This document shows positions 4,601 through 63,907 of a stretch of DNA of 64,000 nucleotides, piece after piece; position 1 is the first letter of the stretch; each line of letters opens with the position of its first letter. The position numbers and the translations under genes were made by a program. Location of the stretch: NCBI RefSeq assembly GCF_001194135.2, contig NC_068990.1:88249971-88313970 (forward strand). The letters run 5' to 3'. The notes beneath the pieces were generated by a model. That model did not search any database. It worked only from the letters and a program-made list of their open reading frames with translations, and was not told the DNA's origin. The DNA is from Octopus bimaculoides. Taxonomy: Eukaryota.

Positions 4601-7600
4601 AATAATAATAATAATGTTTTCTGATTTGGCAAAAACCCCAACATTTTTGAGAGAAAATTTTCCGTCATCAATTACAGTACTTATCAACTCCAGAACTTGA
4701 CTTATTTTATGTTATTAACCCTTGCAAGGCTGAAAGGTAACAGTGACATTGACTGCTTTTGAACTGAAAACATGAAGAGCCTGAATTGCATGCCATAAAG
4801 CATTTCTTGCAATGCTCTACTTAGCATACATGTAAAAAAAAAAAGATGCAGGTGTTGATGCAATCCTCTTGAATATAGAAGGCCTACTATCTAGGCCCAA
4901 TGGAAGAACTCCATCCTGACCTTCAAGAACACATGTCCTCTCAGTTAGTGTTCTCTTACCTATAGGTCTATGCACTGTTTTTCCTATCTATTCTTGATCT
5001 ATTTTACCACTTTCACTTTCCTCATGGCATGACATTTTCTCACAGAATATTAGACATGAATGACACAGCATGTTTGACAGGAACATTTTATTACTGTCAA
5101 AGCAAAGTGTTACAAACAGATACTCTCTCTCTTCTCTCTCTCTTTCACACACATGCACACACATACATACATACTTATGTACACACACACATACATGCAT
5201 ACATACATATATGTAAAATGGGTTTATTTCAGTTTTTTCCATCAAATTCATTCACAAGACTTTGGTCGGTCCAAAGTTATAGTAAATGACACTTGCCCTA
5301 GGTGCAACTCAGTTGGACTGAACCTAAAACCTTGTGGTTGGGAAGTAAACATGTTACTACTGGCCATGTCTGCAGCATTCAATTTTTATTTCTACTAAAA
5401 GAACAATGAGGGTTGGGGTGGGGTCACTTTCTTCATGGAAAACAATTAGTAAAGTTGCTAATTATTGAACAAGGATTTATGATTAATAAACTTGTATTAA
5501 CGTAAGATACAGAAATAAATTTTTTATTCTCAAATGTGTGATGATGCTAATGGAATAGCGTGAACAGGATAAATTATCCATACATTGCAGAAAAATACAT
5601 TACCGGCCAGTCATTTACCACTCAATGGGTGGCAAAATTATGCTAATGACTTATTCCAGTTATTGATATACAGAAGAAACATCCTTGTCACAAATAATCA
5701 CTTTCCCTTTGTATCTCACTAATAGTATTTTTTTTTTTTTTTTTGATGAATAAAATTCCTTAGCTTGGTGAAGTAAGTTATGAATGTCAACATTTACTAC
5801 ATATTTATATTAATTCACTAAATGATAATGAAAGTGAAATTATTTTACTTCTCCAAGACAAAACTTGCAAAATAGTGAAATGATGAGTCTTGTCATGACT
5901 ACTCATATTTAGTTACATCTTTTTACATTTTGGGTTCAAATGCCACCTGGATGTACTTCACCTTTCACATTTCTGAGGTTGATAAAATAAGCATTAGTCA
6001 TGGCTGTGATTGATTTATTCATATGCATTCTCATCACAGAATGTGTGGCTTTCTGTTTAAGTTAGAAACTATTATAATAGTTGTTGGTAAATCAACAATA
6101 ATTATAATTATCCTTGTTGTTAAGGGTGATGGACTGACAAACTCATTAGAGCATCAGACAAAATGTACTGTGATATTTTTCCAGCTTTTTAACTTGAGTT
6201 CCAATCCTATTGATGTTAACTTTGCTTTTCCAGAGCCAATAAATCAAAATGCCAGTCAATTTTATCAACCTACTTCAAAGTTTTTGTTCTTATTATTTGT
6301 TATAAAAATATTATTCTTACTATTTTTCATTGCTCTAAATTTTATTTAGTTCCAGAAACTAAGAATGAATTTGTGAAAATAAAAGGTGCAGTACTGGATG
6401 TGTTAGGGAAAACACTGATCAAAAAAAAAACTGTAACTGCAGAAGCCTGTGCAGAAAAATGTTTGTCTGAGGAAAATTGTTTATCATTTGAAATAACTAA
6501 AGAAGGTGGAAAATGTTACTTATCAAAGAAAAGTGCAACTTTCTCCAAGAAAATAAAATCAGACAAAAGCAGAGATTACTACCAACGAGTAAAACGTGAT
6601 TATTTTTTTGTAGTTTATTATTGAATTTTTTCTTTTTTTTCTGAAATTTGTGATTCCATTTGTACTTCATAATATATAAACAACCATTTCTGTAAAGACA
6701 TTGGCAGGTTTACCTATAAGGGCAGACATAAACAAGTTTCAGCAATAAGGAATATTAGGAACTGTAAATATTGTTAGAGCATTAGAGCATTCTCATACAG
6801 CATTTGTTCACCTTAAACATATTTGTGCATATTTTCTGTTTTTCTTCTCTTTATCTACGAAAGGAAATCCTTGTATTTCTTAAACCTGAATAGTAGTAGC
6901 AGTAGTAGTAGCAGCTAGTAGTAGCAGTAGTAGTAGCAGGTGTTAGTAAGTATACAAGTAAATGTGCCTGTTGACTCGAGAAGGCTAACTGGGAGAGAAT
7001 ACTTACTTTAGTGGTAAGGGTAGCTATGGTTTTGTAGGATTTCCAAGAGTAACCATTTGAGGTCTCCCATCCAGTGGAGAATTTATATTCTTTGTTTAAA
7101 ATTTTGGTATTTTTTCTTTTTTGTTGTATAGTTTACATGCACTTTTATGTCATTCCTTGTTATATCCATGTGCAGACAGGATGCCGGATTCACTTTTACT
7201 GAAAGACAAGAAGCCAAACAGACACAATGCCAAACAGACACAATGCCAAACAGACACAATGCCAAACAGACATAAAGCTGAATGGACACAATAATAATAA
7301 AAAAAAACATCCTTACCTACATAGTTTAATGACCAATTCACCAATTTGGCACTTAAGATTTAATATGATTAAATTTGTCGTTCTGGCATCTTGTCTGTTT
7401 GGCATTGTGTCCATTCAGCTTCTTGTCCTTCGGCAAAAGTGCATTTGATATCCTGTCTGTATACTGTTATATCTCACTCTATTGTCCCCAAAGTTCTTGA
7501 CTACTCTTAGCGATTTATAAAAAACTTTGTTTTTATTATTATTTTATGGGTATTTTTCAAATATATAATTATGTAGAGGTACCATGTAAATGAAATTTTG

Positions 7601-13000: not shown

Positions 13001-13506
13001 GCTGATGTCAACTTTGTCGTTCCAGAGCAATTAAAATACAATGCCAGTGAAGTGCAGGAAACAATTTATTTGACAAACTCCTAACTTAAAGTTTTGGCCT
13101 TATTACTATGTTAGAAATTAATATTATTGTTATTTTTCATTGGCCTAAATTTTACATTAACTTTTAGATCCTCAGATCCATTTTATGGAACTAAAAGGTT
13201 CGGTTCTGGATGTATCTGGAAAAATATTGTGGCCTACGCAAAATGTAACAACTGGAGCCTGTGCAGAAAAATGTTTGTCTGACAAAACTTGTTTATCATT
13301 TGAAATAAATCGCAGAAGTAGAAAATGTTACTTATCAAAGAATACTGCAGCTTCCGCCAAGAAATTAAAGGGAGACAAAGACAGAGATTACTACCAACGA
13401 GTAAAATGTAATTATTCTTTGTATTATATTATTGGATTTTCTTTACCTCATATTCTGAAATTTGTATTTTCATTTGTACTGAAACAAGCCAGTAAGAATC
13501 TGATAT

Positions 13507-13544
<38 letters not shown>

Positions 13545-13666
13545 GTAGTAATTATGTAGATATTTAGCTCACTCTGGTTCACGTTAACATCCAGAAACTT
13601 AGACAACTGCAGCAGTTTCTAAAATTCACTGAGCAATAGTCATTAAGTATATATATNNNNNNNNNN

Positions 13667-13727
<61 letters not shown>

Positions 13728-24344: not shown

Positions 24345-24425
<81 letters not shown>

Positions 24426-24553
24426 TATTATTATTATTATTTTATGTTTGACTTTTGTTTTGCATTTGTACAAGTTGGATCCAAGTCTCACCCAGAGACC
24501 TCAAGAGACAACAAGTTAGAAGTTCATGTAGGTGTTATGCCTAGGGTACCATA

Positions 24554-24631
<78 letters not shown>

Positions 24632-24841: not shown

Positions 24842-24885
<44 letters not shown>

Positions 24886-30418: not shown

Positions 30419-30460
<42 letters not shown>

Positions 30461-42493: not shown

Positions 42494-42541
<48 letters not shown>

Positions 42542-49424: not shown

Positions 49425-49493
<69 letters not shown>

Positions 49494-53637: not shown

Positions 53638-53696
<59 letters not shown>

Positions 53697-55046: not shown

Positions 55047-55078
<32 letters not shown>

Positions 55079-57445
55079 TATTAAGAACTGTATACACTGT
55101 TAAAACATTCTGATACAGCATTTGTTCAACTTGAATACTTTTCTATATATTTTCAGTTGTTTGTTTCTTATTTTACATCAGAAAGGAAACTGTTGTTCTT
55201 TTACTTAAACCTGAAGAGTAGCAGCAGCAGCAACAAGTTTTTATTCATTTGCCTATTTTGACATGACTTATTGCTGGTACAGCACAGTGTTTCACAAGGG
55301 ATGTCATGTTTTACATAACACAATATACAAAATAACAGAGAAAGAAATGCCAATCTACAGATTCATGTATTTTCTACATTTTGACATGGTTGCTATGGCT
55401 GGATGCCCTTCATATCACCAACCATTATACCACATGAAGAAAGTACATTTTCTCATACTGCTAGAATTAGAGAAACTATTTACAAGGACTAAAGAATCAC
55501 CTCAACTTATATAGGTTTCTATTCAGAGTAGTTCCATGGCTTTAAAAACATAAAAGCCAGCAAATTCGCTCAATATTCCTTTTGAAATCCTTCAACATTG
55601 AAATCCTAGACATAAGGGAAAATTCATCAGGTTTATTGATCTCAGTATTAAAATACTTGTGCATGCAAGTATGTCATTACTTTCATGATAAACCTTTTGG
55701 GCCAAAAAGAAAGTTCAGTATTTCATATCTTCTATCTGTTGATCTCTCTTTATTTATCTAACAACATTGACCAATACATTGATGGGTGGATGGAGGAATG
55801 AATACTAATAATAGTAAACTTATTGTAGAAAGATATTGTATCAAACTGAATTAACTTAACAAAATAGCTGTGGTTGTAATTATTTTTAAAAAATTAGTTA
55901 TTCAGAATTTGTACTATCAGCAAGAAAAGTATACATAAACAAATGACTGAAATGAAAGGAATTAATCTTGGTTGGCAAACAGCTTAGACTGTGTTTTGTT
56001 ATTGAAAACTATAATGATGGTATTGGTGGGTTGAATTGACAGTGTAAGTGTTGTTTTTTTTTTTTCTTAATTGAACCAAATTATTTATGTCATCTATCAA
56101 TTAATGGATGTGCAGAAGTGCAATTACAACCCGCTCACTTGAAAATAGATATTTGTTTATGAAATATGGATGACAGAACGTAAGCTAATAGGAGAAAGAA
56201 TGAAATGGTACAGGCAATGATGTAAGGAGAAGCAGAGCGTCAAATAATGAAAACAGGAACAGGAGCATCAAAGAATATAGAATGAATATTTACAAGATAG
56301 AATATTAAATGAAAATGAGAGAAAACATCAAAAGAAAAAAAAACCCTGTAAACATATGGTTGAATGTTACAACATTGGTGACATGAATATTCTCTGTAAT
56401 CAATGTGAAGATGTTAGATTTGTAAATGAACCTCTCAACTGCTGAAAGAATGGGAAACTCATGCCCCTTCAATTACAACCTTATCATGATAGGAATTTTT
56501 AAATGAATATAATGCAGAATTTACAATTTATAATGGAACACTAATTTTTGTGGTTCTATATAAACTTTACCATGAAATTTCCATGGGTATTGCTAGTTAT
56601 TATTACTTTATAGATAGTTTAAAAATATTATATAATTATGTAGAAGTACTGTTAATGATATTCTGAATAAAATATGAAGTGCATTGTTATTAAAATGAGC
56701 AATTCATTATATTAGCATGATCCATCCACAAAATACATTTTCAGCATAAGTCACCCTTTTCAGAATAAATGTGGATCTGATTGCATCATGAGTTATACTC
56801 AAACCTTTGCCTGAATGTTTTTATTTTGGATAATCCATTTAGACATTCTTCTTCCGATGATGTGCTCTTGTTTAAGATTGCATGGTTGTAACAACAGACA
56901 TCTTGGTTGATCACATGTTAAAGGAAGTTTTTACCCCTACAAAAGCACACTATCAGGTTAGTGATGTACAAAGAATTGTCTGCAACCTAGAAATTGAGAC
57001 AAGTTTGAAAATGAGTCTTAAGATGTTCTAAGACTCAGGTGAATTATTTTGTAACTTGTGGGTCATTTTGTGAATCAGTTGTTTGTGCATAATGCATGTG
57101 TATGGATGTGTAAATGTGTATGTTTGCATTTAAAATGTATTCTTTCTTCTTTTTCTTCTAGCCAATAATGAACATTTCATGCTTAAAAAAGTTAGCATAC
57201 CAAAGGAGGATATTTTAGGACAGCGTAAGAATAAGACCTTAAAGGAATGTAATGAAGAATGCAACAGACATCATGGATGTAATTCTTACCAGTACAATGA
57301 GGAAAATAAATTATGTGCTCTGAGTAATGTGACTCAGTGGACTGATAAACTTAAACCCAGCGAAAAACATGTGGATGTGTACATAGCTAACCCTGGTCAG
57401 TAGACTATTTTCATCTTATTTGTATGCATGTGTTTGTGTATTTGC

Positions 57446-57477
<32 letters not shown>

Positions 57478-58253
57478 ACTGCAATGCTGCATAGCAATAA
57501 GACATGGTCCTTGAAAGCAGAAGATGTGAAAAGATTGCCCTTCCCCCACATTTCTCCCAACAAACCTCTATTTCTCCTTCAGCCAGTACCATGTTTCTTC
57601 CTTGCTACCTGAAAACATATCACTTGTTAGCCATTCTTCATTCAGTAATATTGCTCTCTACAAAATTTATTTATTTATTTTGATGATTATTGCTCTAACT
57701 GGTTTTTTTAATTTTATAGCGTTCTAAATTGATCAGTAACTGAATTTTATAGTATACAATTTTTAGGTTTGAGTTAATTTGCCGTTTGCTCGTTCCTTAC
57801 ACATTTGGGATGAACAGTTGTGTGCCATCTAATACCTTTTCATCCTGTTTTGTATATTTTCATGGGTCAACTATGAAAATTGGATTTGAATGTTTTCTGT
57901 TTTTATTGGCTATATATTACTAATAATAATGATAATAATGATAGCAATAATAATGGGACCCCGAGGAGATGGAGTATCCTATATCTTATAATATTTTATA
58001 ATATGTATTAATCATTATGGATGTTCTATCAAAATGTACATAGGTCAATTTCATTATTATTATTATTATTATAATAATTATTATTATTGTAATAAAGTAT
58101 TTTCAACGGATCAGTTTTGAGCTCTATTTAAAGTTGATATATATATATATATACAAAAACTCAACTGTGAGTGTTTTGCTAAGATTGTTAACAGATACTA
58201 TATTCTTTTGCCAAATTTTTGGTGTAAAAAAATATATTTAAACATATATATCT

Positions 58254-58310
<57 letters not shown>

Positions 58311-60986
58311 TTTATGTATATATTAATATTATCTCAGTTATTAAAACTTTCAGTAATTTAAATACGTTAATAGTTACCAGAGGTAGCAAAATTACACTAA
58401 AAAACAAGATATCACAGCCGTTTTACAGGTAGATATACCAAGTTAAAGTGATACATTTTGAGAAGATATATATATATGTGTGTGTTTGATAGATGAATAT
58501 CTTGTGAAAGCAGTACAGGACATGTACAGAGATGCTGCTAGTAAGGCAAGAGTTGGCCATGGGTACAGTGATGAATTTAGGTGTTCACCAAGGGATGGTC
58601 GCAGCCTCCTCTCATTCATCATCATCCTCCAGACCATAACAGAAGCCCATGAGAACTACTATATGCTGATGATCTTTCCCTCATAGCAGAATCTGTAATA
58701 GAATTAGAATAGAAATTCCGCAACTGAAGAAAGTACAACAGAGCTGCAGCTCAATCTATAGCATTCCCATCATTTATTTCGTGGTATTGAGCATAGAGCA
58801 ATATCCATGGTATTGAGCATAGAGAATTCATCAATCAAGAGTTCTACTGTGACATTGTGAAGTGTTTGAGAGAGGACATTCAGCAAAAGCGACTGGATCT
58901 GTGGAGCTAGAAGAATTAGAGTCTTTATGATGACAATGTACTCTATCACTGAGCTCTGCACATTCGTGAGTTTCTCGCCAAAAGTGACTTTATATCACTT
59001 CTACGCCCACCCTATTCACCAGATTTAGCACCTGCAGACTTCTATCTCTTCCCCAAGACGAAAATGCAGCTTAAAGGTTGTTGTTTTAACACCGTAGTTA
59101 AGATACACAGTGAATTGTAAGAGTGGCAGGAATGCTGGGACCAGTGTATTGCTGCAAAGGTGACTATCTTGAAGGAGATGATGTTAAAACTTAGGTTAAT
59201 AAGATATTTCTTATTAAACTGGTCTCATCCTGAAACTTTTTGATACCATCTTGTAACATTTTTATCTCCTAATTTTAACCTTCCTTCTAACATACATGCG
59301 GAATTCATATTAGTTTGTTATCAATTTCAGCTTACTCAAAAATTGACTGTGGATCTCCAAAAGATGTTGTTGGTGCATTCAAATTGTACAATGCCACCAC
59401 CTATGAATCTGAAGTGACCTATACTTGCTCAAATGGAGAACAACTGAAGTCAGAATGTGAAAAGGACAGCAAATGGACACCTGTTCCATCTGTATGTGAA
59501 GGTACTGTAAATAGTTTCTCTTTTGTCTCTCTTCATAGCATATACTGCAGGATGTGGTCATGTACCTTGTGAACGTCTACAAAACAAGTGCACACCTCTA
59601 GGCAAATTCCTGAAGTTTCTTGCAGATTGTTATTGAGTGCATAACTTGTTGGTTTTGCTGCATCTCAGATTGAAGACACACTTCTTCAGCTACCTTGTAC
59701 TCAATGATCTCCCTACATCTCTTTTCCAGAGATAAATCATAGACTTTATTGGGGAGGCTCAACAAGGCAAGTTCTCTGTAATTAGAGCACTCTCATGTGT
59801 TTTTAAAAATTGGGATTCCTACCTGAGATTGCCATTACTTTGGTGTCTTTGCAGAGGTGCATGTCGCCTAGTCTGGATAAGTCATCCAGAAAATACCTTC
59901 TTTATTCTAGGCTTTTAACATATTGGTCCAGATTTCATATGCACCAGTAGCCCTGCCACATTTGATTGCTTTCTTTAATCACCTCTAGGAATTTGGCTTC
60001 AATGTGGTTAAATTGCACTTGTAGATGCACATTTTGCCTACCTTTCACTATGAAATCAATGGATGGTTTTACTAGAACACTTTGTTGGTCAATTTAAAGT
60101 CAGAGTCCAGTTTAACCTCAAAGTCTTCCCCATAACTTAGCCTTCAGCAGTTTCACTGTTTCTGCATCAACGTTTTGCACTTCAGTGCATCATATATGTA
60201 AATTGAGAGACCCATTTAAAAGCCACTCTTTGTAATCCTATTTCCATTGTATCTTGGAATTCCTGGTTAAATCAGGGAGTTCTTTTACCTCTTGGTGCCA
60301 CTCCAAGTTGCTATCCTTTACATGTTACACACTGCTGTGCAAAACATTCTCTACACTATTTTGACATCCTCATTTTCTTCAGGAAGGTCTCTGAATTTCT
60401 ATGCAATAGTGTCTACATATTTGTTTCTAATCCCATCATCCAACAGAGCTTCCCACTTTATTTAGTAAGTCACCTGGTCTTATTAGTTTTGTGAGTTCTG
60501 TCTATTGTAGTCTCAAGTTGCAGACAACTAGGTGGTGATTAGTTGATAACTCAGCCCCACTCTTCACATAAACATCCAATCACAGAATCAAAGAAATACA
60601 AATGACAGTGAGATTTATCTGCGTCCCACTAAGTATCTTATTCAAAGTTTATCTCCTCATTCTCTCCCACCAAATATACATGCAGCATTGGCAAACATCA
60701 GAGTTTTCAATTACAGATTATGCGCAAATTAATTGTGGAACTCCAGAAGATGTTGATAATGCATTGAAGTCATATAAAACCACCACCTATAAATCTGAAG
60801 TGACCTATACTTGCCCAAAGGGAGAAAAACTAAAGTCAACATGTGAAAAGGACAACAAATGGACTCCAGTAGCTTCTGCTTGTAAAGGTAATGTAAATAT
60901 TTTCTCTCCTGTTGTCTTGGTCTGTCCATTAATATTTGATTTTGCATTAAATTTTGTTTTACTTTATTGACTCCTCCTCCTCCTCC

Positions 60987-61038
<52 letters not shown>

Positions 61039-63907
61039 TTAAAGCTCATTTTCCAAGCCTACCTGGGTGGAACTGTTCAACAGCTTTCAATGATCCACAG
61101 GATTGCATGAAGCCCAAATGTCACCTATGGCATGGTTTCTGTTGCTTGATGCACTTTCTAGCACCAACCACTTTACAGAGTGTACTGGGTGGTGCTTTTA
61201 TTTCATGAAAGTGGCATTTGTGAGGTCAACAAACAAATTGAAAGCCAATTACTTTTCTCTGAGCTACATGTTTATGCACAGTGGTCTCCATCCACTCTAA
61301 CCATTTTTGCCACTTTCACCTTACATTCAATACTTTCTCTCCTCTCTTATCTTCTATAGAAGTGCAAATTTGTGTGAGAGATTGACGGAAGAGGTCAGTC
61401 TCTATTGTCTGATCTTTCAGCTCCTTTCGGTTCACAATATCTTCAACTATAGCTTCAAATCAAGTAAAATTGCCTTCTCTGCCCAGTTAACGAAGGGTTT
61501 GGGGCAACCACCTTAAACACAACAGCAGCTGTTTCACTTAATTCCACAAGTCAGGTCAACAATGCCTGAACAATGACTGGGTGCATGCAAAATGATTTTG
61601 TTTTGCTGCAAGTATCTCAGACAGGATTGTTGAGTGGTAGTTCCTTGACTGTAGATTTTTTTATCTTGGACTAGTAAAACCCCTTGGTGGCTTTGCAAAG
61701 CCAAGGATTTTAGGAAGTTGTCCATAGTATTCAGTGACCAAAAGGTTTGCAAAACATATTTGCCAGTTAGTTTTCATTGATGATGATGATCATCATCATT
61801 ATTTAATGTCTGCTTTCCAAGCTGGCATGTGTTGGATGGTCTACCGTGCTTCTACAGCTGGATGCCCTTCCTAATGCAAACCACTCTGATAGTGCAGTGG
61901 GTGCTTTTTATGTGCGACTGGCACAGGAGCCAGTCAGGAGGTATTGATGCTCAGTGCAAACCTTTAGATTACCAGTGCTCTATTCATCCACTAACTCTCA
62001 ATTGATTGTTAGAATGGGATATCCACCAATTCCATTACCCATGTCAGAATTCATCCAGTGTACTTTATCTTTTGTAATCCATAGGATTACATTGGATTAT
62101 ATGGTCATCCCCTTTACTTAAAATAGTGGTGTGTGATTGTGGGAGATTTTGTTAATATTTCTTGCATAAGTGTTTTCACAGTCACTGGCTCATGATAAAT
62201 ATTGAAGTTTAATATTGCAAGCTACCAAATCTGACATAGCTGATCCTCTGATATAATCTGATGCCTGGTTCAACACCACAATCTTCAGTTGGTCATAGCA
62301 AAGACGGTGAACAATATTTGGTCCAATGTTTATATATTTATTACAATATCAAGCATTCATATTGAGCCACATATTTTCTCAGGCTTGCTATTTAGCATTG
62401 AGATTCTTGTCAAAGGTAATGTTTATTTATTCACAGTTTAAGAAATTAATCATGCATCATCTTGTAGCTTGAAGATTTCAATGATGTGATTATTTTGTAC
62501 TAGAATGATGTTGTAGGTTAGGTATGAAAGGCTGGATATGGCTGATTTAATCATAAAGCAGGTAGAACTTTTGGGCTGGATATGGCTGGTTAAATGCTAG
62601 TGGTTTAATGATGTGTAAGGCAGAGGGTTGCCTCAAAATTTCATGTCATGATTGTTTCTGTTATGACTAGCTTATCAATAATAAGCTCAGTGAATCAATT
62701 ATGTATTCACTGTTGAAGGACGACATGACCACACATAATTTTAAAAAATCAATGGGATTGTGTAATGTCTCTGTCATGTCAAGTGAACTGATGAGGCTGA
62801 GAATCAAACCTAGATCCTTGAACCACACCACTCAGTTCACATTTATACTAAAAGAACAACTAGGGAAAAATACTCAAGGTCCCTTTCTGCATGGAAAACA
62901 AATATTAAACTGGCTAATTATTGAGCAAAGATATGATTAATTAGGATTTCACTCTCAATTCATGGTAAAATCATTATATTGACTTCTTCCGGTGAAGAAA
63001 TTTGGAAGAAACAAACTCTTAAAGATAATCATTATTTTTATTGTCACACTAAAAAAGGTACATTAAGTTGTGAGTGTACACTTTTACTACATACATATAC
63101 TAATTCACAAGATTACGATGAAAGTGCAATCATTTTTGTTATCCAGGCCAAAAACAGTAAATTCATGTAATTTGCTGTGACCTGCCACATTTAGTTACAT
63201 CGTTTTATATTCTGGATTTAATCTTAAGAGGATGTATTTTGCTTTTTACCCTTCTGATGTTGATAAATCAAGCACTAGTGAAGAAATAGTTACTTTATAT
63301 TCATGTATCCTCACAGAAAAATGTGTGGCAATATGCTTATATGAAGAACTGCTTCTATCAACATTGTTACTGTGAAGAATAATCATAATTACTGTTGTTG
63401 GTTAGGGTGATGTATTCACAGAATCGTTCTACCATCAGACAAAATGTGTTGTGGTATTTTTCTAATTCTTTAACTTCTGACTACAAATCCTGCTAACGAT
63501 AATTTTGCTCTTCCAGGGCCAATAAAATGTAGGGACCAGTTTAATTTTATTGGTCCCTCCAGGGCCAAATATATTAATTAACTCCTGCCTCAAACTTTTG
63601 GCCTTATTTCTTTGTCAAAAATTTATAGTATTGTTATTTTTCATTCTTCTCAATTATATTTACACTCTAGATATTCAAATCCATTTTGTGAAAGTAAAAA
63701 ATGCAGCTCTGGATGCAACAGAAAAAACATTATGGAGTAAGAAAAAAGTAACAGCAGATGCATGTGCTGAAAAATGTTTATCTGACAAAAGTTGTGTATC
63801 ATTTGAAATGACAAAAGCAAGTGGACTCTGTTACTTATTAAAAAAAACTGCAACTTCCTCAAAAATAAAAACAGACGAAAGCAGAGATTACTACCAACGA
63901 GTAAAAT
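1436..63907 (+). CDS. Interior of a giant multi-exon gene encoding (PAN-A/PAN-B/Sushi)n repeats; predicted extracellular glycoprotein, partial at both ends
   Basis: 34 homologous exons of three classes in repeating order. All are flanked by AG/GT, phase 1-1 and stop-free, with invariant Cys. Junction codons formed in genomic order are all sense codons. Summed exon length is 7185 nt. Confidence 0.88.
1943..2176 (+). CDS. Exon B1, PAN/apple-like type B
   Basis: ttccag|CT, G|gtcagt, 234 nt. NEHPVIFKRV...NIGRL...CHEACRAYPDCRIYEYNEKSKFCDLSNVT...WDAYLIHP. Confidence 0.9.
2550..2621. other. Assembly gap (others: 13657-13666, 31330-31442, 34904-35414, 42542-42706)
   Basis: N runs next to (TA)n or (TG)n microsatellites. 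Confidence 0.95.
3110..3335 (+). mobile_element. RTE-clade LINE endonuclease (APE) N-terminal fragment
   Basis: Translates to KVGTIAGSTGEIIERLEQCHVDMLGMQDVRWKG...KFFWVG...IGILLAENW, matching the APE N-terminus (xQExRWxG, GVGIL). Confidence 0.75.
3604..3774 (+). CDS. Exon C1, Sushi/CCP
   Basis: ttccag|TT, G|gtaaca, 171 nt. VFTEINCGAPKDIAG...YTCPGGEKQKSICEKDNLWTPVRFIC. Confidence 0.88.
6356..6595 (+). CDS. Exon A2, PAN type A
   Basis: tccag|AA, C|gtgatt, 240 nt. ETKNEFVKIK...CAEKCLSEENCLSFEITKEGGKCYLS. Confidence 0.9.
7171..7461. mobile_element. MITE/foldback element with imperfect terminal inverted repeats of about 45 bp and an internal 16-mer tandem
   Basis: Left cagacaggat...cacttttactgaaagacaagaagc; right gcttcttgtccttcggcaaaagtg...atcctgtctg. 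(gccaaacagacacaat)x3.75 at 7213-7272 has an inverted copy near 7392-7410. Confidence 0.65.
8169..8402 (+). CDS. Exon B2, PAN type B
   Basis: tgcag|CC, G|gtcagt, 234 nt. NDKHLMFKS...CNKTCLLSPECNSYLYNEKAKSCFLSNVT. Confidence 0.9.
8480..8720 (+). mobile_element. RTE LINE ORF2 3' fragment (same position as 30790-30910 and 57474-57535)
   Basis: VRTSMLHSSKMWALN...RLERNESSML, matching the RTE C-terminal pattern LYGSETW...LERxE. Confidence 0.65.
9150..9680 (-). mobile_element. Decayed non-LTR retrotransposon fragment, probably R4/Dong-type
   Basis: Minus-strand remnants TYPRRDSRG (LYxPRxxGGRG-like) and downstream motifs, with many stops. Confidence 0.4.
9959..10083. repeat. (AAT)n microsatellite
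   Basis: Direct observation. Confidence 0.95.
10572..10742 (+). CDS. Exon C2a, Sushi/CCP
   Basis: tttcag|TT, G|gtaaca, 171 nt. VYTEIDCGTPKDIAG...YVCPDGEQLKSICEKDNKWTSVASTC. Confidence 0.88.
11720..11890 (+). CDS. Exon C2b, Sushi/CCP
   Basis: tttcag|CT, G|gtaatg, 171 nt. AYEKINCGTPKDVVG...YICPKGVKLKSACRKDNKWTPVPSTC. Confidence 0.88.
13168..13407 (+). CDS. Exon A3, PAN type A
   Basis: tttag|AT, T|gtaatt, 240 nt. DPQIHFMELK...CAEKCLSDKTCLSFEINRRSRKCYLS. Confidence 0.9.
13723..14200 (+). mobile_element. Tc1/mariner-superfamily (maT-like) transposon 5' fragment
   Basis: Begins TA|cacagggtgtg after a (TA)n run. Encodes ...RTPEFVGEIQTMIDNAPSQSIRSIIRNMGVSEFLIRQVVHEDIRYSSYK (HTH region). Confidence 0.75.
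14536..14766 (+). CDS. Exon B3, PAN type B
   Basis: tgcag|CC, G|gtcagt, 231 nt. GEPLKLKKVSIP...CNETCYQYSECNSYDYNEEAKICELS. Confidence 0.9.
14920..16480 (-). mobile_element. RTE LINE 3' portion (RT remnants plus (GAT)n tail)
   Basis: Minus strand REKLGIKGIRCIVQQRRLHWFGHLMHMDENNC...RKTWD, with a tail at 14920 matching the RTE-SINE end. Confidence 0.7.
16505..16650. repeat. (CATA)n/(CA)n microsatellite
   Basis: Direct observation. Confidence 0.9.
16809..16979 (+). CDS. Exon C3, Sushi/CCP (absent from ORF track)
   Basis: ttccag|TA, G|gtaatg, 171 nt. My translation: VFTIIDCGPPKDIIGASKSYNTTTYKSEVTYTCPGKHKFKSICKEDNKWTSEVSHCK. Confidence 0.88.
17460..17877 (+). mobile_element. Tigger/pogo-like DNA transposon remnant (3' TIR gaggtatgcctg)
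   Basis: Ends in a pogo-type TIR 50 nt before the A4 acceptor and replaces the intron block found upstream of other A exons. The 5' end was not identified. Confidence 0.45.
17928..18167 (+). CDS. Exon A4, PAN type A
   Basis: tccag|CT, T|gtaatt, 240 nt. ASQIHFVKIE...CAQKCLSDRHCLSFETTKKSGKCYLS. Confidence 0.9.
19993..20226 (+). CDS. Exon B4, PAN type B
   Basis: tctag|CT, G|gtcagt, 234 nt. DDDLLKFKSTSIPGYDTFER...CDHVCHQTLGC...CDRSNAT...WGWD. Confidence 0.9.
20650..21340 (+). mobile_element. R4/Dong-type non-LTR retrotransposon RT fragment
   Basis: DHCESTNILTVEQ...LLINKTV...WLDYK*AFDFVLHSWMLETL, matching RT domains 1-3, with stops. Confidence 0.75.
21421..21591 (+). CDS. Exon C4, Sushi/CCP
   Basis: tttcag|AT, G|gtaatg, 171 nt. 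DYAKIECGLPKDIAG...YTCRKGEQLKSICGKNRKWTPVAETC. Confidence 0.88.
21872..22410 (+). mobile_element. Ty3/gypsy integrase fragment
   Basis: DSFTKWLEI...FTRFGIPDVIVYDNGAQFVSSEF / PYHPTSNGQAD...FKRALRK (rve core), frameshifted. Confidence 0.85.
22888..23127 (+). CDS. Exon A5, PAN type A
   Basis: tttag|AT, C|gtaatt, 240 nt. DTQIHFMKVK...CAGKCLSDKDCLSFELNRKSGECYLS. Confidence 0.9.
23690..24330 (-). mobile_element. R4/Dong-type RT fragment
   Basis: GPGPDSVQGY...; KDKSKGNIVCYYRPITCIPLVWKLLTGMLSESIYEHLDSQNLLP. Confidence 0.8.
24343..24630. repeat. Two (ATT)n microsatellites (24343-24442, 24556-24630)
   Basis: Direct observation. Confidence 0.95.
24631..24885 (+). mobile_element. tRNA-derived SINE (octopus-type, Meta-like central domain), relatively young
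   Basis: ggcggcgagctggcagaatc...ttctgagttcaaattcc...gtcaactttgccattcatcctttcggggtcgataaattaagtacc...gtagaaagg(ata)n. Family assignment is from memory. Confidence 0.75.
25477..25710 (+). CDS. Exon B5, PAN type B
   Basis: ttccag|CC, G|gtcagt, 234 nt. SNKTVSLKRV...NIGRL...CEQACHLYQGCRSYEYDDKAKMCDLSNVT. Confidence 0.9.
25840..26312 (+). mobile_element. RTE LINE 3' end with SINE-type tail
   Basis: MHWYGHVMCMGEDSCVKKC...GRGRPRKT followed by the gagtggttggcattaggaagggcatc motif. Confidence 0.75.
27071..27241 (+). CDS. Exon C5, Sushi/CCP (absent from ORF track)
   Basis: ttccag|TC, G|gtaata, 171 nt. VFSIIDCGPPKDIAGASKSYNSTAYNSEVIYTCPRGEKLKSVCKEDHKWMPFLSECK. Confidence 0.88.
27500..27690 (-). mobile_element. 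tRNA-derived SINE head (second family; similar copy at about 5285-5370)
   Basis: Reverse-oriented tRNA-like head gaactgaacccagaaccatgcatttgagaagcaaacttgttaccatgcagcca. Confidence 0.55.
28513..28752 (+). CDS. Exon A6, PAN type A
   Basis: ttcag|TC, C|gtaatt, 240 nt. VTEVHFVKIE...CEKKCLSDKTCLSFEINKGSGQCYLS. Confidence 0.9.
30507..30740 (+). CDS. Exon B6, PAN type B
   Basis: tctag|CT, G|gtcagt, 234 nt. NDEHFALKQVSIPK...CNEACYEYQGCNSYQYSEKNKLCVLSNIT. Confidence 0.9.
32207..32377 (+). CDS. Exon C6a, Sushi/CCP
   Basis: ttccag|TT, G|gtaaca, 171 nt. VFTRVNCGSPKDVVGAFKLYNAT...YTCSDGEQLKSECEKDNKWTPVASVC. Confidence 0.88.
33382..33552 (+). CDS. Exon C6b, Sushi/CCP (absent from ORF track)
   Basis: ttacag|AT, G|gtaatg, 171 nt. 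DYAQINCGTPKDIANASKSYKTTTYKSEVTYTCPKGEKLKSTCEKDNKWTPVASACK. Confidence 0.88.
33841..34077 (+). CDS. Exon A7, PAN type A (one-codon deletion)
   Basis: tctag|AT, T|gtaatt, 237 nt. DIQIHFVKVK...CAEKCFSDKKCVSFEIIKTSGLCYLL...ASSKIK. Confidence 0.9.
35860..36316 (+). mobile_element. Two tandem tRNA-derived SINE copies, same family as 24631
   Basis: Both carry gacttcgcctttcatcctttc/gactttgcctttcattctttc and end in gtagaaag(att)n. Confidence 0.7.
36948..37178 (+). CDS. Exon B7, PAN type B
   Basis: ttccag|CT, G|gtcagt, 231 nt. DEPLKLKKVSIP...CNEACQEYEGCNSYEYNENDKLCGLS. Confidence 0.9.
37282..38150 (+). mobile_element. Composite Tc1/mariner remnant: mariner 5' TIR and HTH, then maT-like catalytic C-terminus
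   Basis: TA|cacgtggtctgatcaataagt (also at about 35463). DEHSGRHTTSRTEKN...TIREL; then APSH...WPRNSPDLNPLAYYVW...AVIDAESDYI. Confidence 0.8.
38234..38404 (+). CDS. Exon C7, Sushi/CCP
   Basis: ttccag|TT, G|gtaatg, 171 nt. VFAKVDCGPPKDIAG...YTCTEGEKLKSICEDDNKWTPLASTC. Confidence 0.88.
38880..39119. mobile_element. pogo/Tigger-type MITE, 240 bp, TA target duplication
   Basis: TA|cagtaatcctttgccatattg ... caatagttgaagaattactg|TA, inserted in the conserved post-C intron block. Confidence 0.75.
40120..40356 (+). CDS. Exon A8, PAN type A
   Basis: tccag|TC, C|gtaatt, 237 nt. VAELHFVKIT...CAEKCLADPNCLAFEITKTGGKCYLT. Confidence 0.9.
42201..42434 (+). CDS. Exon B8, PAN type B
   Basis: ctccag|CA, G|gtcagt, 234 nt. 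TDEIIKFKSTMIPGEDTFER...CAQACHQNSKC...CDRSNVT...WGWD. Confidence 0.9.
42980..44285. repeat. Pyrimidine-rich tract (about 42980-43270) and purine-rich GA tract (about 43830-44285)
   Basis: Direct observation of low-complexity composition. Confidence 0.85.
44390..44682 (+). mobile_element. RTE-related SINE
   Basis: gtaaaagcacccatcacactctcagagcagttggcattaggaagggaatccag...ccatgccagcatgga...(gat)n. Confidence 0.75.
45340..45900 (+). mobile_element. R4/Dong-type non-LTR retrotransposon C-terminus (CCHC knuckle plus restriction-like endonuclease)
   Basis: AQDQALNT...ESVTHVVSACESLAQKEYEHRHDKVAQNLHWLLCCKYG...WDFDFQTD..DHRRPDIV, with stops. Confidence 0.85.
46280..46503 (+). mobile_element. RTE-related SINE, young copy (CpGs retained)
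   Basis: gtgacacgtaaaagcacccactacactctctgagtggttggcgttagg...catggaaagcggacgttgaacgatgatgatg. Confidence 0.8.
46578..46748 (+). CDS. Exon C8, Sushi/CCP
   Basis: ttccag|AG, G|gtaata, 171 nt. EYSQIECGPPKEVVG...YTCPNGEKVKSSCEKDNKWTPVVSSC. Confidence 0.88.
47012..47251 (+). CDS. Exon A9, PAN type A
   Basis: tctag|AT, T|gtaaat, 240 nt. DSQLHFVKIK...CAKKCLSDKNCLSFEITKGSGKCYLS. Confidence 0.9.
49084..49314 (+). CDS. Exon B9, PAN type B (absent from ORF track)
   Basis: tttcag|CT, G|gtcagt, 231 nt. DKPLQIKKVSTPEKKNIGRLTNVNLKKCNEACLQYIGCNSYEYNKKGKLCDLSNVTQLTAELKPNNGNWDIYMINP. Confidence 0.9.
49590..50186 (+). mobile_element. RTE LINE 3' end with SINE-type tail
   Basis: Similar to 25840-26312 and ends in (gat)n at about 50186. 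Confidence 0.7.
52140..52750 (+). mobile_element. Tigger (pogo) transposase C-terminus and 3' TIR
   Basis: WQYVSEFVEKYHHEK...LINDSALVHFRNILKVRKMQTFLDMFL; ends gaggtatcactg|TA. Confidence 0.75.
52840..53110 (+). mobile_element. Helitron PIF1-like helicase C-terminal fragment
   Basis: PFQFKR...[36 protein letters not shown]...QNIIYPEAL. Confidence 0.85.
53861..54031 (+). CDS. Exon C9, Sushi/CCP
   Basis: ttccag|TC, G|gtaatg, 171 nt. VFTIIDCGTPKDIATASKSYNSTTYKSEVIYTCPGGKKLKSECKEDSEWAPLSSGCK. Confidence 0.88.
54644..54883 (+). CDS. Exon A10, PAN type A
   Basis: ttcag|TC, C|gtaatt, 240 nt. VTEILFLKVK...CKKKCLSDKDCLSFEINKRSGQCYLS. Confidence 0.9.
55725..56520 (+). mobile_element. Probable Helitron-derived insertion
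   Basis: Diverges from the paralogous A6-B6 intron at about 55725, contains the 124-bp repeat of 53205-53328, and encodes IGDMNILCNQC...EPLNC-like Zn-region remnants. Confidence 0.45.
57162..57395 (+). CDS. Exon B10, PAN type B
   Basis: tctag|CC, G|gtcagt, 234 nt. NNEHFMLKKVSIPK...CNEECNRHHGCNSYQYNEENKLCALSNVT. Confidence 0.9.
58470..58740 (+). mobile_element. RTE LINE RT fragment
   Basis: IDEYLVKAVQDMYRDAASKARVG..., with the catalytic YADD (tatgctgatgat) near 58661. Confidence 0.75.
58940..59255 (+). mobile_element. mariner transposase C-terminus and 3' end
   Basis: REFLAK...PPYSPDLAPADFYLFPKTKMQLKG...WQECWDQCIAAKGDYLEGD. Confidence 0.85.
59331..59501 (+). CDS. Exon C10a, Sushi/CCP
   Basis: tttcag|CT, G|gtactg, 171 nt. 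AYSKIDCGSPKDVVGAFKLYNAT...YTCSNGEQLKSECEKDSKWTPVPSVC. Confidence 0.88.
59540..60480 (-). mobile_element. Decayed R4/Dong-type retrotransposon C-terminal fragment
   Basis: Minus-strand remnants resemble the pre-CCHC region. It is absent from the paralogous C6a-C6b intron. Confidence 0.45.
60717..60887 (+). CDS. Exon C10b, Sushi/CCP
   Basis: ttacag|AT, G|gtaatg, 171 nt. DYAQINCGTPEDVDNALKSYKTT...KSTCEKDNKWTPVASAC. Confidence 0.88.
60990..61205 (-). mobile_element. RTE-related SINE (another copy at about 61790-61935)
   Basis: (cat)n followed by ...gcaccaaccactttacagagtgtactgggtg; the second copy has ggatgcccttcctaatgcaaaccactc. Confidence 0.65.
63671..63907 (+). CDS. Exon A11, PAN type A (same one-codon deletion as A7)
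   Basis: tctag|AT, T|gtaatt, 237 nt. DIQIHFVKVK...CAEKCLSDKSCVSFEMTKASGLCYLL. Confidence 0.9.

What the first reader, a model, noticed from the sequence alone, without database searches (positions are those of the whole stretch)
6356..63907. Four-cassette higher-order repeat (about 21-30 kb period)
Seen: double-Sushi units occur at cassettes 2, 6 and 10. B subtypes recur every fourth unit: B1/B5/B9 share NIGRL; B2/B6/B10 share ANxxH; B3/B7 share EPLKLKKVSIP and 231 nt; B4/B8 share FKSTxIPGxDTFER, CDRSN and WGWD. A6~A10, A7~A11, C4~C8 (xYxxIEC) and C5~C9 also pair up. The A2-A6 offset is 22157 nt and the A6-A10 offset is 26131 nt. Inference: a 13-exon tetramer was itself tandemly amplified, giving satellite-like higher-order structure inside a coding gene.
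Basis: partly seen in the sequence, partly recalled or inferred. Interest (0 to 1): 0.75.

Follow-up and report, generated by a model that had tools for sequence, protein, structure and literature searches.

The report
Four-cassette super-repeat in octopus gene
The window is part of a giant Octopus bimaculoides gene built from PAN-PAN-Sushi exon cassettes; a block of four cassettes (13 exons) was copied in tandem several times, which is a real but familiar way for repeat proteins to grow.

Summary
The + strand carries 34 intact exons: PAN/Apple "A" (240/237 nt), PAN/Apple "B" (234/231 nt) and Sushi "C" (171 nt). All have AG/GT splice sites and phase 1-1, and they splice into 2,394 codons without a stop. 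They form 11 cassettes, with a double Sushi at cassettes 2, 6 and 10. All assembly gaps lie in intronic dinucleotide microsatellites.

Period 4 is significant (p = 3e-4 overall; p = 0.0095 without the youngest copy) and also shows in the introns. Cassette trees give (6,10) 100%, (4,8) 100%, (2,(6,10)) 87% and (5,9) 69%. No adjacent cassettes are sisters. 3/7 and 1/5 are unresolved.

The window is O. bimaculoides chromosome CM046610.1. RefSeq splits this stretch into fragment models. Same-strand cassettes were found in sampled loci across at least 570 kb, and the most distal sampled locus ends in a GON domain.

The O. vulgaris orthologue (4,470 aa) is collinear. It has 1:1 orthologues of cassettes 2-5, then four copies of the 6-9-type tetramer. 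The duplications are old: dS is 0.2-0.6, against 0.10 between the species. The copies are under moderate constraint.

This is a new example of a known kind, like the complement receptor 1 long homologous repeats or nebulin super-repeats. "Satellite-like" overstates it.

The parts
1436..3774 (+). Cassette 1: exons A1 1436-1675, B1 1943-2176, C1 3604-3774. It lies before the finding's stated start and is not in any RefSeq model.
6356..11890 (+). Cassette 2 (double Sushi): A2 6356-6595, B2 8169-8402, C2a 10572-10742, C2b 11720-11890.
   Evidence: Its O. vulgaris orthologues V2B, V2Ca and V2Cb are 80-86% identical in amino acids.
13168..16979 (+). Cassette 3: A3 13168-13407, B3 14536-14766 (231 nt), C3 16809-16979.
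17928..21591 (+). Cassette 4 (B of the FKSTxIPGxDTFER...WGWD type): A4 17928-18167, B4 19993-20226, C4 21421-21591.
   Evidence: Cassettes 4 and 8 are sisters with 100% bootstrap.
22888..27241 (+). Cassette 5 (B with NIGRL): A5 22888-23127, B5 25477-25710, C5 27071-27241.
   Evidence: Cassettes 5 and 9 group with 69% bootstrap.
28513..33552 (+). Cassette 6 (double Sushi): A6 28513-28752, B6 30507-30740, C6a 32207-32377, C6b 33382-33552.
   Evidence: Cassettes 6 and 10 are sisters with 100% bootstrap.
33841..38404 (+). Cassette 7: A7 33841-34077 (237 nt), B7 36948-37178 (231 nt), C7 38234-38404.
   Evidence: A7/A11 are 93% identical.
40120..46748 (+). Cassette 8 (B of the WGWD type): A8 40120-40356 (237 nt), B8 42201-42434, C8 46578-46748.
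   Evidence: B8 is 91% and C8 85% identical to cassette 12, which lies beyond the window.
47012..54031 (+). Cassette 9 (B with NIGRL): A9 47012-47251, B9 49084-49314 (231 nt), C9 53861-54031.
54644..60887 (+). Cassette 10 (double Sushi): A10 54644-54883, B10 57162-57395, C10a 59331-59501 (donor GTACTG), C10b 60717-60887.
63671..63907 (+). Exon A11 (237 nt), the first exon of cassette 11. The rest of the cassette lies beyond the window.
   Evidence: Continuation seen.
6356..28512 (+). Tetramer copy I (cassettes 2-5; 13 exons; 22,157 nt).
   Evidence: It has 1:1 orthologues in O. vulgaris.
28513..54643 (+). Tetramer copy II (cassettes 6-9; 13 exons; 26,131 nt). It is longer than copy I mainly because introns B8>C8 and B9>C9 are about 4.1-4.5 kb.
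54644..64000 (+). Start of tetramer copy III (cassettes 10-13). It continues past the window end.
13657..13666 (.). Assembly gap in a (TA)n tract of intron A3>B3. Gaps of the same kind are at 2550-2621, 31330-31442, 34904-35414 and 42542-42706. All are intronic.

Best explanation
What it is. The window (Octopus bimaculoides, CM046610.1, about 88.250-88.314 Mb, + strand) is an internal slice of a very large tandem array of exon cassettes. Each cassette encodes PAN/Apple - PAN/Apple - Sushi, with one domain per exon, and every fourth cassette here has a second Sushi.

How it arose. Every exon is phase 1-1 and a multiple of 3 nt. Any unequal crossing-over between misaligned cassettes therefore keeps the reading frame. 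A unit of four cassettes (13 exons, about 22-26 kb including introns) was duplicated in tandem at least twice in the lineage leading to the window (cassettes 1/2-4 -> 5/6-8, then 5-8 -> 9-12). The orthologous O. vulgaris region carries more copies.

Age and constraint. The duplications are old; the youngest layer predates the O. bimaculoides/O. vulgaris split. The copies have since diverged under moderate purifying selection, with some gene conversion blurring the tree.

What is shown. Exon structure, periodicity, intron homology, cross-species collinearity and domain identity.

What is inferred.
- The mechanism is unequal crossing-over (non-allelic homologous recombination).
- The whole array is one gene, or a few very long genes.
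- The product is a secreted, multivalent lectin-like or adhesive protein ending in a GON domain. Each cassette would offer a tandem-apple binding site spaced by Sushi modules.
For: Structure.
- 34 of 34 exons have AG/GT sites and phase 1-1, and there is no stop in 7,185 nt.
- Pfam gives PAN_1 (E = 6.7e-19), PAN_2 and Sushi (30.6 bits against a cut-off of 20.7).
- All 12 cysteines and the Sushi tryptophan are invariant across the 10 cassettes.
- An AlphaFold model of one cassette has pLDDT 83. Foldseek matches factor XI/prekallikrein apple domains, TgMIC4 apples, the Sarcocystis lectin SML-2, the HGF N domain and C1s CCPs. MIC4, DAF, CR1 and CR2 match by sequence.

Periodicity.
- Permutation tests for period 4: p = 3e-4 for all 11 cassettes, p = 0.0095 for cassettes 1-8 only, and p = 0.014 / 0.0026 / 0.0011 for exon classes A / B / C.
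- Concatenated neighbour-joining bootstraps: (6,10) 100, (4,8) 100, (2,(6,10)) 87, (5,9) 69.
- Most introns find their best match at lag 4 or 8. Introns of the 5-8/9-12 layer (five cassette 6/10 pairs, two 5/9 pairs, one 8/12 pair) are mostly 78-84% identical, with A5>B5 vs A9>B9 at 69%. Introns of the older layer are about 72%.
- Cassettes 11 and 12, beyond the window, continue the register: A11/A7 93%, B12/B8 91%, C12/C8 85%.

Age and selection.
- dS is 0.165-0.29 for the young layer and 0.39-0.64 for the old layer, against 0.44-0.63 for neighbouring cassettes.
- Orthologous exons between O. bimaculoides and O. vulgaris have dS 0.10, and orthologous introns are 89% identical.
- Paralogue dN/dS is 0.3-0.8.

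Cross-species.
- The O. vulgaris protein CAI9728790.1 (4,470 aa; gene range 416 kb) maps collinearly onto the window from B2.
- V2-V5 are unambiguous orthologues of W2-W5.
- The 6-9-type tetramer then recurs as V6-9, V10-13, V14-17 and V18-21.
- Position classes form clades: 6/10 class A 92, Ca 98, Cb 80; 7/11 class A 97, B 84; 8/12 class A 95, B 82; 9/13 class B 70.
- W6B groups with V6B (68), separately from W10B+V14B+V18B (100).

Context.
- Same-strand cassettes appear in every sampled locus from 88.248 to 88.816 Mb.
- GON exons occur only at the most distal sampled locus.
Against: - Classes 3/7 (15% bootstrap) and 1/5/9 (5%) are not recovered in the window-only tree.
- Several off-period groupings are well supported: A3 with A6/A10 96%; C3 with C5/C9 89-95%; C8 with C6b/C10b 96% when flanks are included.
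- In the W+V trees some copies cluster by species (W8B+W12B 61%; V8B+V12B+V16B 62%). This fits gene conversion or independent duplication rather than one simple history.
- The old layer is barely less diverged than the neighbour background.
- The O. bimaculoides assembly contains gaps. Exons B11 and A12 are missing beyond the window.
- No transcript evidence was examined. RefSeq splits the array into several models and omits cassette 1, A2, B7, C7 and A8.
- Function is inferred from domain folds only.
- Trees are neighbour-joining on short alignments, not maximum likelihood.
Confidence: 0.85

Rival explanations
1. There was only one segmental duplication (cassettes 5-8 -> 9-12). The apparent third, older copy (cassettes 1/2-4) is chance resemblance, so there was no repeated amplification of a tetramer.
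For: The old-layer dS (0.39-0.64) overlaps the neighbour background (0.44-0.63). Pairs 3/7 and 1/5 are not sisters.
Against: - Period 4 stays significant with cassettes 9-11 removed (exact p = 0.0095).
- (4,8) has 100% and (2,(6,10)) 87% bootstrap.
- The double Sushi recurs at cassette 2.
- Introns C1>A2/C5>A6, A3>B3/A7>B7, A4>B4/A8>B8 and C2a>C2b/C6a>C6b are each other's best matches.
- O. vulgaris has four young tetramers plus the 2-5 copy.
Confidence: 0.05
2. It is an assembly artefact: a falsely duplicated block, from uncollapsed haplotypes or mis-scaffolding at the N gaps, in a short-read-based assembly.
For: The region has five gaps. A small redundant fragment next to a 10-N gap exists just upstream of the window. 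Beyond the window, B11 and A12 fall in gaps.
Against: - The copies differ by 7-30% in exons and 16-28% in introns, far more than haplotypes would.
- All gaps sit in intronic microsatellites.
- The O. vulgaris sequence held for the neighbouring part of the array has no N, and the O. vulgaris protein is collinear with the window.
- An O. sinensis fragment (P0012) matches cassette 8/12.
Confidence: 0.02
3. The period-4 similarity was created by selection or gene conversion acting on cassettes in equivalent structural positions of the protein, not by block duplication.
For: - Some exons are far more conserved than their neighbours. C6b/C10b differ at dN 0.03 but dS 0.30. T3Cb, 470 kb away, is 92-93% identical to them.
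- Some copies cluster by species.
Against: - Lag-4 homology runs through introns in register, up to 1.6 kb contiguous and including deep-intron segments.
- Synonymous divergence shows the same layering as non-synonymous divergence.
- Conversion needs pre-existing homology at that spacing.
Confidence: 0.05
4. The repeat is real, but it is not inside one coding gene. The array is a cluster of several separate genes, or partly of unexpressed exon relics, as the fragmented annotation suggests.
For: - RefSeq and the O. vulgaris annotation split the array into models of 700-4,500 aa.
- No transcripts were examined.
- Orthologue dN/dS is 0.82, which is close to neutral.
Against: - Model boundaries fall inside exons or at gaps. 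P0001 starts within B2, P0002 within B8 and P0005 within a B exon.
- No signal-peptide or GON exons were found in about 340 kb of sampled array, except at the distal end.
- There is no stop or frameshift in 34 window exons, although intron indels are frequent.
- Cysteines are invariant.
- Paralogue dN/dS is 0.3-0.7.
Confidence: 0.25

Closest known systems
Complement receptor 1 (CR1/CD35) long homologous repeats (own knowledge; CR1 matched the Sushi part by sequence)
   Same: Both are Sushi-containing extracellular proteins in which a block of several one-domain exons (7 CCPs in CR1) was duplicated in tandem by unequal crossing-over. This gives a period in the tens of kilobases and position-specific similarity between blocks.
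   Different: The unit here is 4 cassettes: 8 PAN plus 5 Sushi domains, in 13 exons. The copies are much more diverged. The array has tens of cassettes and ends in a GON domain. No size polymorphism or function has been shown.
Nebulin and titin super-repeats, and multi-domain block duplication in general (Bjorklund, Ekman and Elofsson 2006, PMC1553488)
   Same: [quoted passage not shown] The octopus array behaves the same way: it has young central tetramers and older flanking ones.
   Different: The domain families differ, the protein is extracellular, and the repeat is nested (period 2 within period 4).
Alpha-satellite-type higher-order repeats (own knowledge)
   Same: There is a fixed order of diverged monomer types, repeated as a larger unit. 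Similarity is higher at the higher-order period than between neighbours.
   Different: This sequence is coding, with 0.3-4.5 kb introns between monomers. Higher-order copies are only 73-93% identical in exons and about 72-84% in introns. There is no evidence of ongoing homogenisation in the window.
LOC106874924 / GON-Abd-1 (UniRef R4G2C1, Abdopus aculeatus): the single-cassette paralogue
   Same: It has the same three domain exons in the same order, one exon per domain, and the same unusual GTCAGT donor after the B exon. Its B is of the WGWD type. It lies on the same chromosome and strand, 115 kb upstream, and ends in a GON domain like the distal end of the array.
   Different: It has one cassette, its own signal-peptide exon, and 465 aa in total. 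It is only about 47% identical to the array's last cassette plus GON.
SVEP1-like and ADAMTS9/20-like proteins (names carried by the database models)
   Same: They share Sushi repeats (SVEP1) or a C-terminal GON domain (ADAMTS9/20).
   Different: Pfam found no VWA, EGF, pentraxin, metalloprotease or thrombospondin domain in the window cassette or in the terminal model. The names reflect partial domain hits only.

Membership tests
Multi-domain block (super-repeat / higher-order) tandem duplication in a coding gene | At least two distinguishable monomer types occur in a fixed order, and that order is repeated. | tested here: met
   The order double-Sushi cassette, EPLKLKK-type, WGWD-type, NIGRL-type recurs at cassettes 2-5, 6-9 and 10-12. 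It recurs four to five times in O. vulgaris.
Multi-domain block (super-repeat / higher-order) tandem duplication in a coding gene | Units one period apart are more similar than neighbours, beyond chance. | tested here: met
   Permutation p = 3e-4, and p = 0.0095 without the youngest copy. Per exon class, p = 0.014 / 0.0026 / 0.0011. Bootstrap clades.
Multi-domain block (super-repeat / higher-order) tandem duplication in a coding gene | The duplication is at the DNA level, so intron homology is in the same register. | tested here: met
   For example, A6>B6 vs A10>B10 aligns over 932 nt at 79%, and C5>A6 vs C9>A10 over 603 nt at 84%.
Multi-domain block (super-repeat / higher-order) tandem duplication in a coding gene | The reading frame is preserved across copies (symmetric exon phases). 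| tested here: met
   All 34 exons are phase 1-1 and multiples of 3 nt. The spliced ORF of 2,394 codons has no stop.
Multi-domain block (super-repeat / higher-order) tandem duplication in a coding gene | The exons are transcribed and spliced into one mRNA. | not testable with these tools
   Only predicted models were available. No RNA data.
Satellite-type higher-order repeat | Higher-order copies are nearly identical (about 95-100%) while the monomers inside them are 20-40% diverged. | tested here: not met
   Lag-4 identity is A 84%, B 74% and C 81%, against 79%, 67% and 74% for other lags. The best copy pair is 81-93% identical.
Satellite-type higher-order repeat | Recent homogenisation in the centre of the array. 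| tested here: inconclusive
   O. vulgaris pairs V11/V15, V13/V17, V12/V16 and V14/V18 are sisters at 95-100% bootstrap. The matching O. bimaculoides stretch lies beyond the DNA I could fetch.
PAN/Apple domain (Pfam PF00024, clan PAN) | Profile match above the curated cut-off, conserved cysteines and the apple fold. | tested here: met
   PAN_1 scores 68 bits against a cut-off of 21.4, with two stretches. Four invariant Cys in A and four in B. Foldseek matches FXI, prekallikrein, MIC4, SML-2 and HGF N domains.
Sushi/CCP domain (Pfam PF00084) | Profile match above the cut-off, four Cys and the conserved Trp. | tested here: met
   30.6 bits against a cut-off of 20.7. C164, C190, C200, C213 and W206 are invariant. 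DAF, CR1 and CR2 match by sequence.
ADAMTS9/20 (GON-1) family | Reprolysin metalloprotease domain, thrombospondin type-1 repeats and a GON domain. | tested here: not met
   The terminal model P0004 has PAN, Sushi and GON (E = 6.3e-33) only. There is no GON in the window.
SVEP1 | VWA, EGF and pentraxin domains together with the Sushi repeats. | tested here: not met
   Pfam finds only PAN-family and Sushi domains in the cassette and in P0004.

The most novel reading that the evidence does not exclude
The window belongs to a single gene that spans roughly 0.6 Mb in O. bimaculoides and well over 0.5 Mb in O. vulgaris. That gene would encode a secreted PAN-PAN-Sushi...GON protein of more than 16,000 residues (about 75-100 cassettes), among the largest animal proteins.

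Every exon is phase 1-1, so the array could also be read combinatorially by exon skipping. That would give a diversified family of lectin-like recognition or adhesion molecules. Tetramer copy number might also differ between species or individuals.
Probability: 0.2. Interest if true: 0.7.

Novelty: new member of a known kind. Interest (0 to 1): 0.4.

Why it matters
The finding documents nested (period 2 within period 4), cross-species-conserved block duplication of whole exon cassettes. It can be read at both exon and intron level, in an uncharacterised cephalopod gene that current annotations break into unrelated-looking fragments with misleading names ("SVEP1-like", "ADAMTS20-like", "uncharacterized").

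Practical value:
- It shows that the RefSeq models LOC128248837 and LOC128248838 are pieces of one array and miss at least eight exons in this window.
- It gives a register for re-annotating the locus.

Biological value:
- The locus could serve as a model for how giant extracellular repeat proteins grow and diverge. Young tetramers sit in the centre and old ones at the flanks. dN/dS is high at 0.5-0.8, yet cysteines and reading frames are perfectly kept.
- A single-cassette, GON-ending paralogue lies 115 kb upstream. Its Abdopus orthologue carries the database name GON-Abd-1.

The mechanism itself is textbook, so the general significance is moderate.

Tried and rejected
- Trees on exons plus 150-nt flanks were noisier than exon-only trees because of indels and repeats. 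I relied on exon, concatenated and protein trees instead.
- No maximum-likelihood tree program is installed. I used K2P or Kimura neighbour-joining with bootstrap.
- The search for homologous proteins returned only 7 Octopus models, and none of the models over 1,200 aa. It did not even return P0004 for a query cut from P0004. The long models were reached indirectly through the search of protein representatives and the listing of cluster members.
I re-ran it with 15 accepted cassettes.
- DNA for the O. vulgaris orthologue of the window could not be fetched because the gene range is 416 kb. Cross-species dS for window cassettes and orthologous intron tests were therefore not possible. I calibrated on the neighbouring orthologous region instead.
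- Literature searches for octopus + PAN domain + Sushi, for GON-domain + coleoid + venom, and for related terms found nothing on this gene. Ruder et al. 2013 is not held.
- Pfam scans of ten intronic ORFs gave only one sub-threshold DDE_3 hit.
- No signal-peptide exon for the array was found using the small paralogue's N-terminus as a probe.
- Rejected explanations: haplotype or scaffolding artefact, a single duplication only, and pure convergence or conversion. See the rival explanations.
Full report
**What is in the window**

The sequence is eukaryotic: 34% GC, many dinucleotide microsatellites and five N gaps. A tblastn scan with three seed peptides found a regular + strand series of three exon types. 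Reading the flanks fixed the boundaries:
- A exons are 240 nt (237 nt in A7, A8 and A11).
- B exons are 234 nt (231 nt in B3, B7 and B9), with a constant G|GTCAGT donor.
- C exons are 171 nt.

All 34 exons have an AG acceptor and a GT donor, are multiples of three and are phase 1-1. Concatenated, they give 2,394 codons without a stop.

Pfam identifies A and B as PAN/Apple domains and C as Sushi/CCP. The four cysteines of each domain and the Sushi tryptophan are invariant in all ten complete cassettes. An AlphaFold model of cassette 6 has mean pLDDT 83. Its structural neighbours are the factor XI/prekallikrein apple domains, the Toxoplasma MIC4 apples, the galactose-binding Sarcocystis lectin SML-2, the HGF N domain and C1s CCP modules. 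MIC4, DAF, CR1 and CR2 are also hit by sequence.

**Assembly gaps**

This was the scan program's first question. All five gaps lie inside introns: B1>C1, A3>B3, B6>C6a, A7>B7 and B8>C8. Each is at least 107 nt from an exon and abuts a (TA)n or (TG)n tract. No reading frame crosses a gap. An extra exon hidden in a gap cannot be strictly excluded, but the cassette composition is regular without one.

**The observation**

There are eleven cassettes, A-B-C or A-B-C-C. The double Sushi is at cassettes 2, 6 and 10. The finding's start and end are exactly the first base of A2 and the last base of A11, and the offsets 22,157 and 26,131 are exact. All quoted motifs are present.

Corrections:
- B9 is also 231 nt.
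- C4 and C8 share a motif but are not nearest relatives.
- A complete cassette 1 lies before the stated start.

**Is period 4 real?**

Nucleotide identity is highest at lag 4: A 84%, B 74% and C 81%, against about 79%, 67% and 74% at other lags. Lag 8 is raised for B and C (72%, 80%) but not for A (79%). Shuffling cassette order gives p = 3e-4. With cassettes 9-11 removed, the exact p is 0.0095. Each exon class is significant alone, and the Sushi exons also carry an older period of 2 (p = 0.008).

A concatenated A+B+C neighbour-joining tree (1,000 bootstraps) gives (6,10) 100, (4,8) 100, (2,(6,10)) 87 and (5,9) 69. Cassettes 3 and 7 fall in one clade but are not sisters. Cassette 1 does not join 5/9. 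No neighbouring cassettes are sisters.

The similarity is not confined to exons. Self-BLAST diagonals at about +22.2 kb and +26.1 kb run for up to 1.6 kb. Most introns have their best match in the intron four or eight cassettes away. In-register intron identity is mostly 78-84% in the young layer and about 72% in the older layer. These were block duplications of genomic DNA.

Off-period groupings exist: A3 with A6/A10, A9 with A7/A11, C3 with C5/C9, and C8 with C6b/C10b. They point to an older dimer structure and/or gene conversion.

**Where the window comes from**

A protein search identified Octopus bimaculoides. Locus look-ups place the window at CM046610.1:88,249,971-88,313,970.
- RefSeq LOC128248837 covers B2 to part of A7.
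- LOC128248838 covers part of B8 onward.
- Cassette 1, A2, B7, C7 and A8 are in no model.

Cassettes also lie outside the window:
- Upstream, there is a Sushi exon 1.6 kb before the window.
- Downstream, a C11 fragment resembles C7, B12 is 91% identical to B8 and C12 is 85% identical to C8, so the period-4 register continues.
- Cassettes occur again at 88.42-88.46 Mb and at 88.78-88.81 Mb. At the last locus the series ends with A-B followed by four GON-domain exons (Pfam GON, E = 6e-33), and the next gene is unrelated.

No GON or signal-peptide exon was found elsewhere in about 340 kb of sampled array. Other parts of the array have other local orders:
- At 88.42 Mb the double Sushi is at cassettes 2, 4 and 5.
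- Near the 3' end the order has period three to four, with B domains 92-97% identical to each other.
- An O. sinensis model from another part of the array again has a double Sushi at every fourth cassette.

**Cross-species test**

The full library scan and cluster look-ups recovered the O. vulgaris model CAI9728790.1 (4,470 aa; gene range 416 kb). It maps collinearly onto the window from B2.
- Its first cassettes are unambiguous orthologues of window cassettes 2-5: 80-88% amino-acid identity, with the next best match at 53-75%.
- A tetramer of the 6-7-8-9 type then occurs four times (V6-9, V10-13, V14-17, V18-21).
- A more diverged set follows (V22-25), before the orthologue of the 88.42-Mb region.

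In joint protein trees the four positions of the tetramer form clades:
- 6/10 class: A 92, Ca 98, Cb 80.
- 7/11 class: A 97, B 84, C 66.
- 8/12 class: A 95, B 82, C 64.
- 9/13 class: B 70, C 64.

The older cassettes pair 1:1 between the species (73-100). W6B groups with V6B, separately from W10B+V14B+V18B (100). The 6/10 split therefore predates speciation. Pairs V11/V15, V12/V16, V13/V17 and V14/V18 (95-100) mark a younger duplication. I could not tell whether O. bimaculoides shares it, because that DNA was out of reach. The genomic distance to the 88.42-Mb region would fit a similar cassette number (inference).

**Age and selection**

In the neighbouring region, which has the same cassette order in both species, orthologous exons have dS 0.10 and dN/dS 0.82. 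Orthologous introns are 89% identical over 19 kb.

| Comparison | dS |
|---|---|
| 7/11 | 0.165 |
| 6/10 | 0.20 |
| 8/12 | 0.24 |
| 5/9 | 0.29 |
| Young layer pooled | 0.23 (dN/dS 0.54) |
| Older layer | 0.39-0.64 |
| Neighbouring cassettes | 0.44-0.63 |

The youngest tetramer duplication in the window is about twice as old as the species split. This rules out an assembly or haplotype artefact. It also makes "satellite-like" an overstatement.

Intact frames and splice sites, invariant cysteines and dN/dS below 1 argue that the exons are functional. The constraint is weak for an extracellular structural protein, especially in the B domain.

**How it most likely works**

Shown:
- modular phase 1-1 exons;
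- block duplication including introns;
- nested periodicity;
- conservation of the arrangement across Octopus species.

Inferred:
- The duplications arose by unequal crossing-over between cassettes misaligned by four units. This is always frame-preserving here.
- The array is one gene, or a few very long genes, ending in the GON domain.
- The product is a secreted multivalent binding protein. Tandem apple pairs would act as binding sites, as in the MIC4 and SML-2 lectins or the factor XI apple domains, spaced by Sushi modules.

A single-cassette paralogue (LOC106874924) has a signal peptide, then A, B, C and GON. It is 91% identical to UniRef "GON-Abd-1" of Abdopus aculeatus. It lies 115 kb upstream on the same strand and has the same exon structure and the same GTCAGT donor. 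A cuttlefish protein has WGWD-type B, three Sushi domains and GON. These suggest the ancestral architecture from which the array grew.

From my own knowledge, not verified here, the GON-Abd names come from a posterior salivary (venom) gland transcriptome study (Ruder et al. 2013). That would be a lead for expression.

**Comparison with what is known**

Growth of repeat proteins by several domains at a time, often in the middle of the array, is well documented, with nebulin growing by seven (PMC1553488). From my own knowledge, the closest parallel is complement receptor 1, whose seven-CCP long homologous repeats arose the same way. The octopus locus is a new, undescribed example rather than a new kind. 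My literature searches found nothing on it. It is not an ADAMTS or SVEP1 family member, despite database names, because the defining domains are absent.

**Verdict**

- Novelty: new member of a known kind.
- Interest is moderate (0.4). It would rise if the array proves to be a single gene of more than 16,000 codons or a combinatorially spliced one.

Noticed in passing
L004 1-1815 (upstream of the window); L002 31769-45566 (downstream); L003; L001: PAN-PAN-Sushi cassettes lie on the same strand in every sampled locus from at least 88.248 to 88.816 Mb of CM046610.1. They are annotated as at least six separate models (1133, 709, 1865, 761, 4083, 1730 and 1067 aa). GON-domain exons occur only at the distal end. 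O. vulgaris models sum to more than 16,000 aa.
   Followed up: partly
L008 10001-20609 (CM046610.1:88,124,138-88,134,746): A small paralogue, LOC106874924 (465 aa: signal peptide, A, B, C, GON), lies 115 kb upstream on the same strand, with an NDUFV1-like gene in between. It has one exon per domain and the same GTCAGT donor after B. It is 91% identical to UniRef GON-Abd-1 (Abdopus aculeatus).
   Followed up: partly
window 59497-59512 and 60684-60716: Exon C10a has the donor G|GTACTG instead of the usual G|GTAAY. RefSeq model P0002 uses a donor 5 nt downstream and an upstream acceptor of C10b, which inserts 12 residues (GTHWQTSEFSIT). Whether this is a real isoform or a prediction fix is unknown.
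   Followed up: no
window 1436-6595, 36948-40356; 13168-13407: RefSeq omits exons A1, B1, C1, A2, B7, C7 and A8. It also truncates A3 in LOC128248837 next to the 10-N gap. All of these exons are intact in the DNA.
   Followed up: yes
L003 vs L005/L006 (O. vulgaris OX597823.1 24.01-24.19 Mb): Orthologous introns are about 3 times longer in O. vulgaris: 16-17 kb per cassette against about 6 kb. One intron is 230 nt in O. bimaculoides and 13.8 kb in O. vulgaris. The cause could be real transposable-element gain or sequence missing from the short-read-based O. bimaculoides assembly.
   Followed up: no
L001 12277-12447 vs window 33382-33552 and 60717-60887: The second Sushi of a double-Sushi cassette 470 kb away (T3Cb) is 92-93% identical in nucleotides to C6b and C10b, which is as close as those two are to each other. 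Its neighbouring exons are only 70-82% identical. This suggests strong constraint on this Sushi subtype or long-range gene conversion.
   Followed up: partly
L003 / O. vulgaris orthologous exons: Orthologue dN/dS is 0.82 overall (1.08 for A exons; 1.65 for cassette M3/V3), even though cysteines and reading frames are perfectly conserved. This suggests rapid or diversifying evolution of surface residues.
   Followed up: no
L004 529-616: A copy of the 3' half of the upstream Sushi exon (KSVCGKNNKWTPVVFICK) sits directly after a 10-N gap, 170 nt downstream of the complete exon. It looks like redundant sequence at a gap edge, which would be an assembly artefact. It lies outside the window.
   Followed up: partly
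window 37798-38133 (+); also 13916-14200, 58953-59117, 45173-45658, 3087-3431, 52911-53156: Transposable-element relics lie in the introns. One is a DDE_3 (Tc1/mariner-type) transposase C-terminus at E = 2.5e-4, below the Pfam cut-off. The other ORFs resemble transposase, retrotransposon or helicase fragments by eye but gave no Pfam hit. Intron B8>C8, which holds the 45173-45658 ORF, and intron B9>C9, which holds the 52911-53156 ORF, are about 3 kb longer than their counterparts in copy I.
   Followed up: partly
window 53205-53340 and 55762-55899; 44494-44680, 46320-46503, 49978-50174, 26149-26305, 61850-61946, 530-608: Short interspersed repeats occur in the introns. One 138-nt pair is 96% identical, which suggests recent insertion. 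A family of about 180 nt is present in at least six copies on both strands.
   Followed up: no
window 60940-61107: A long trinucleotide microsatellite lies just after exon C10b. It reads as poly-His, poly-Ser or poly-Pro in different frames. It is intronic.
   Followed up: no
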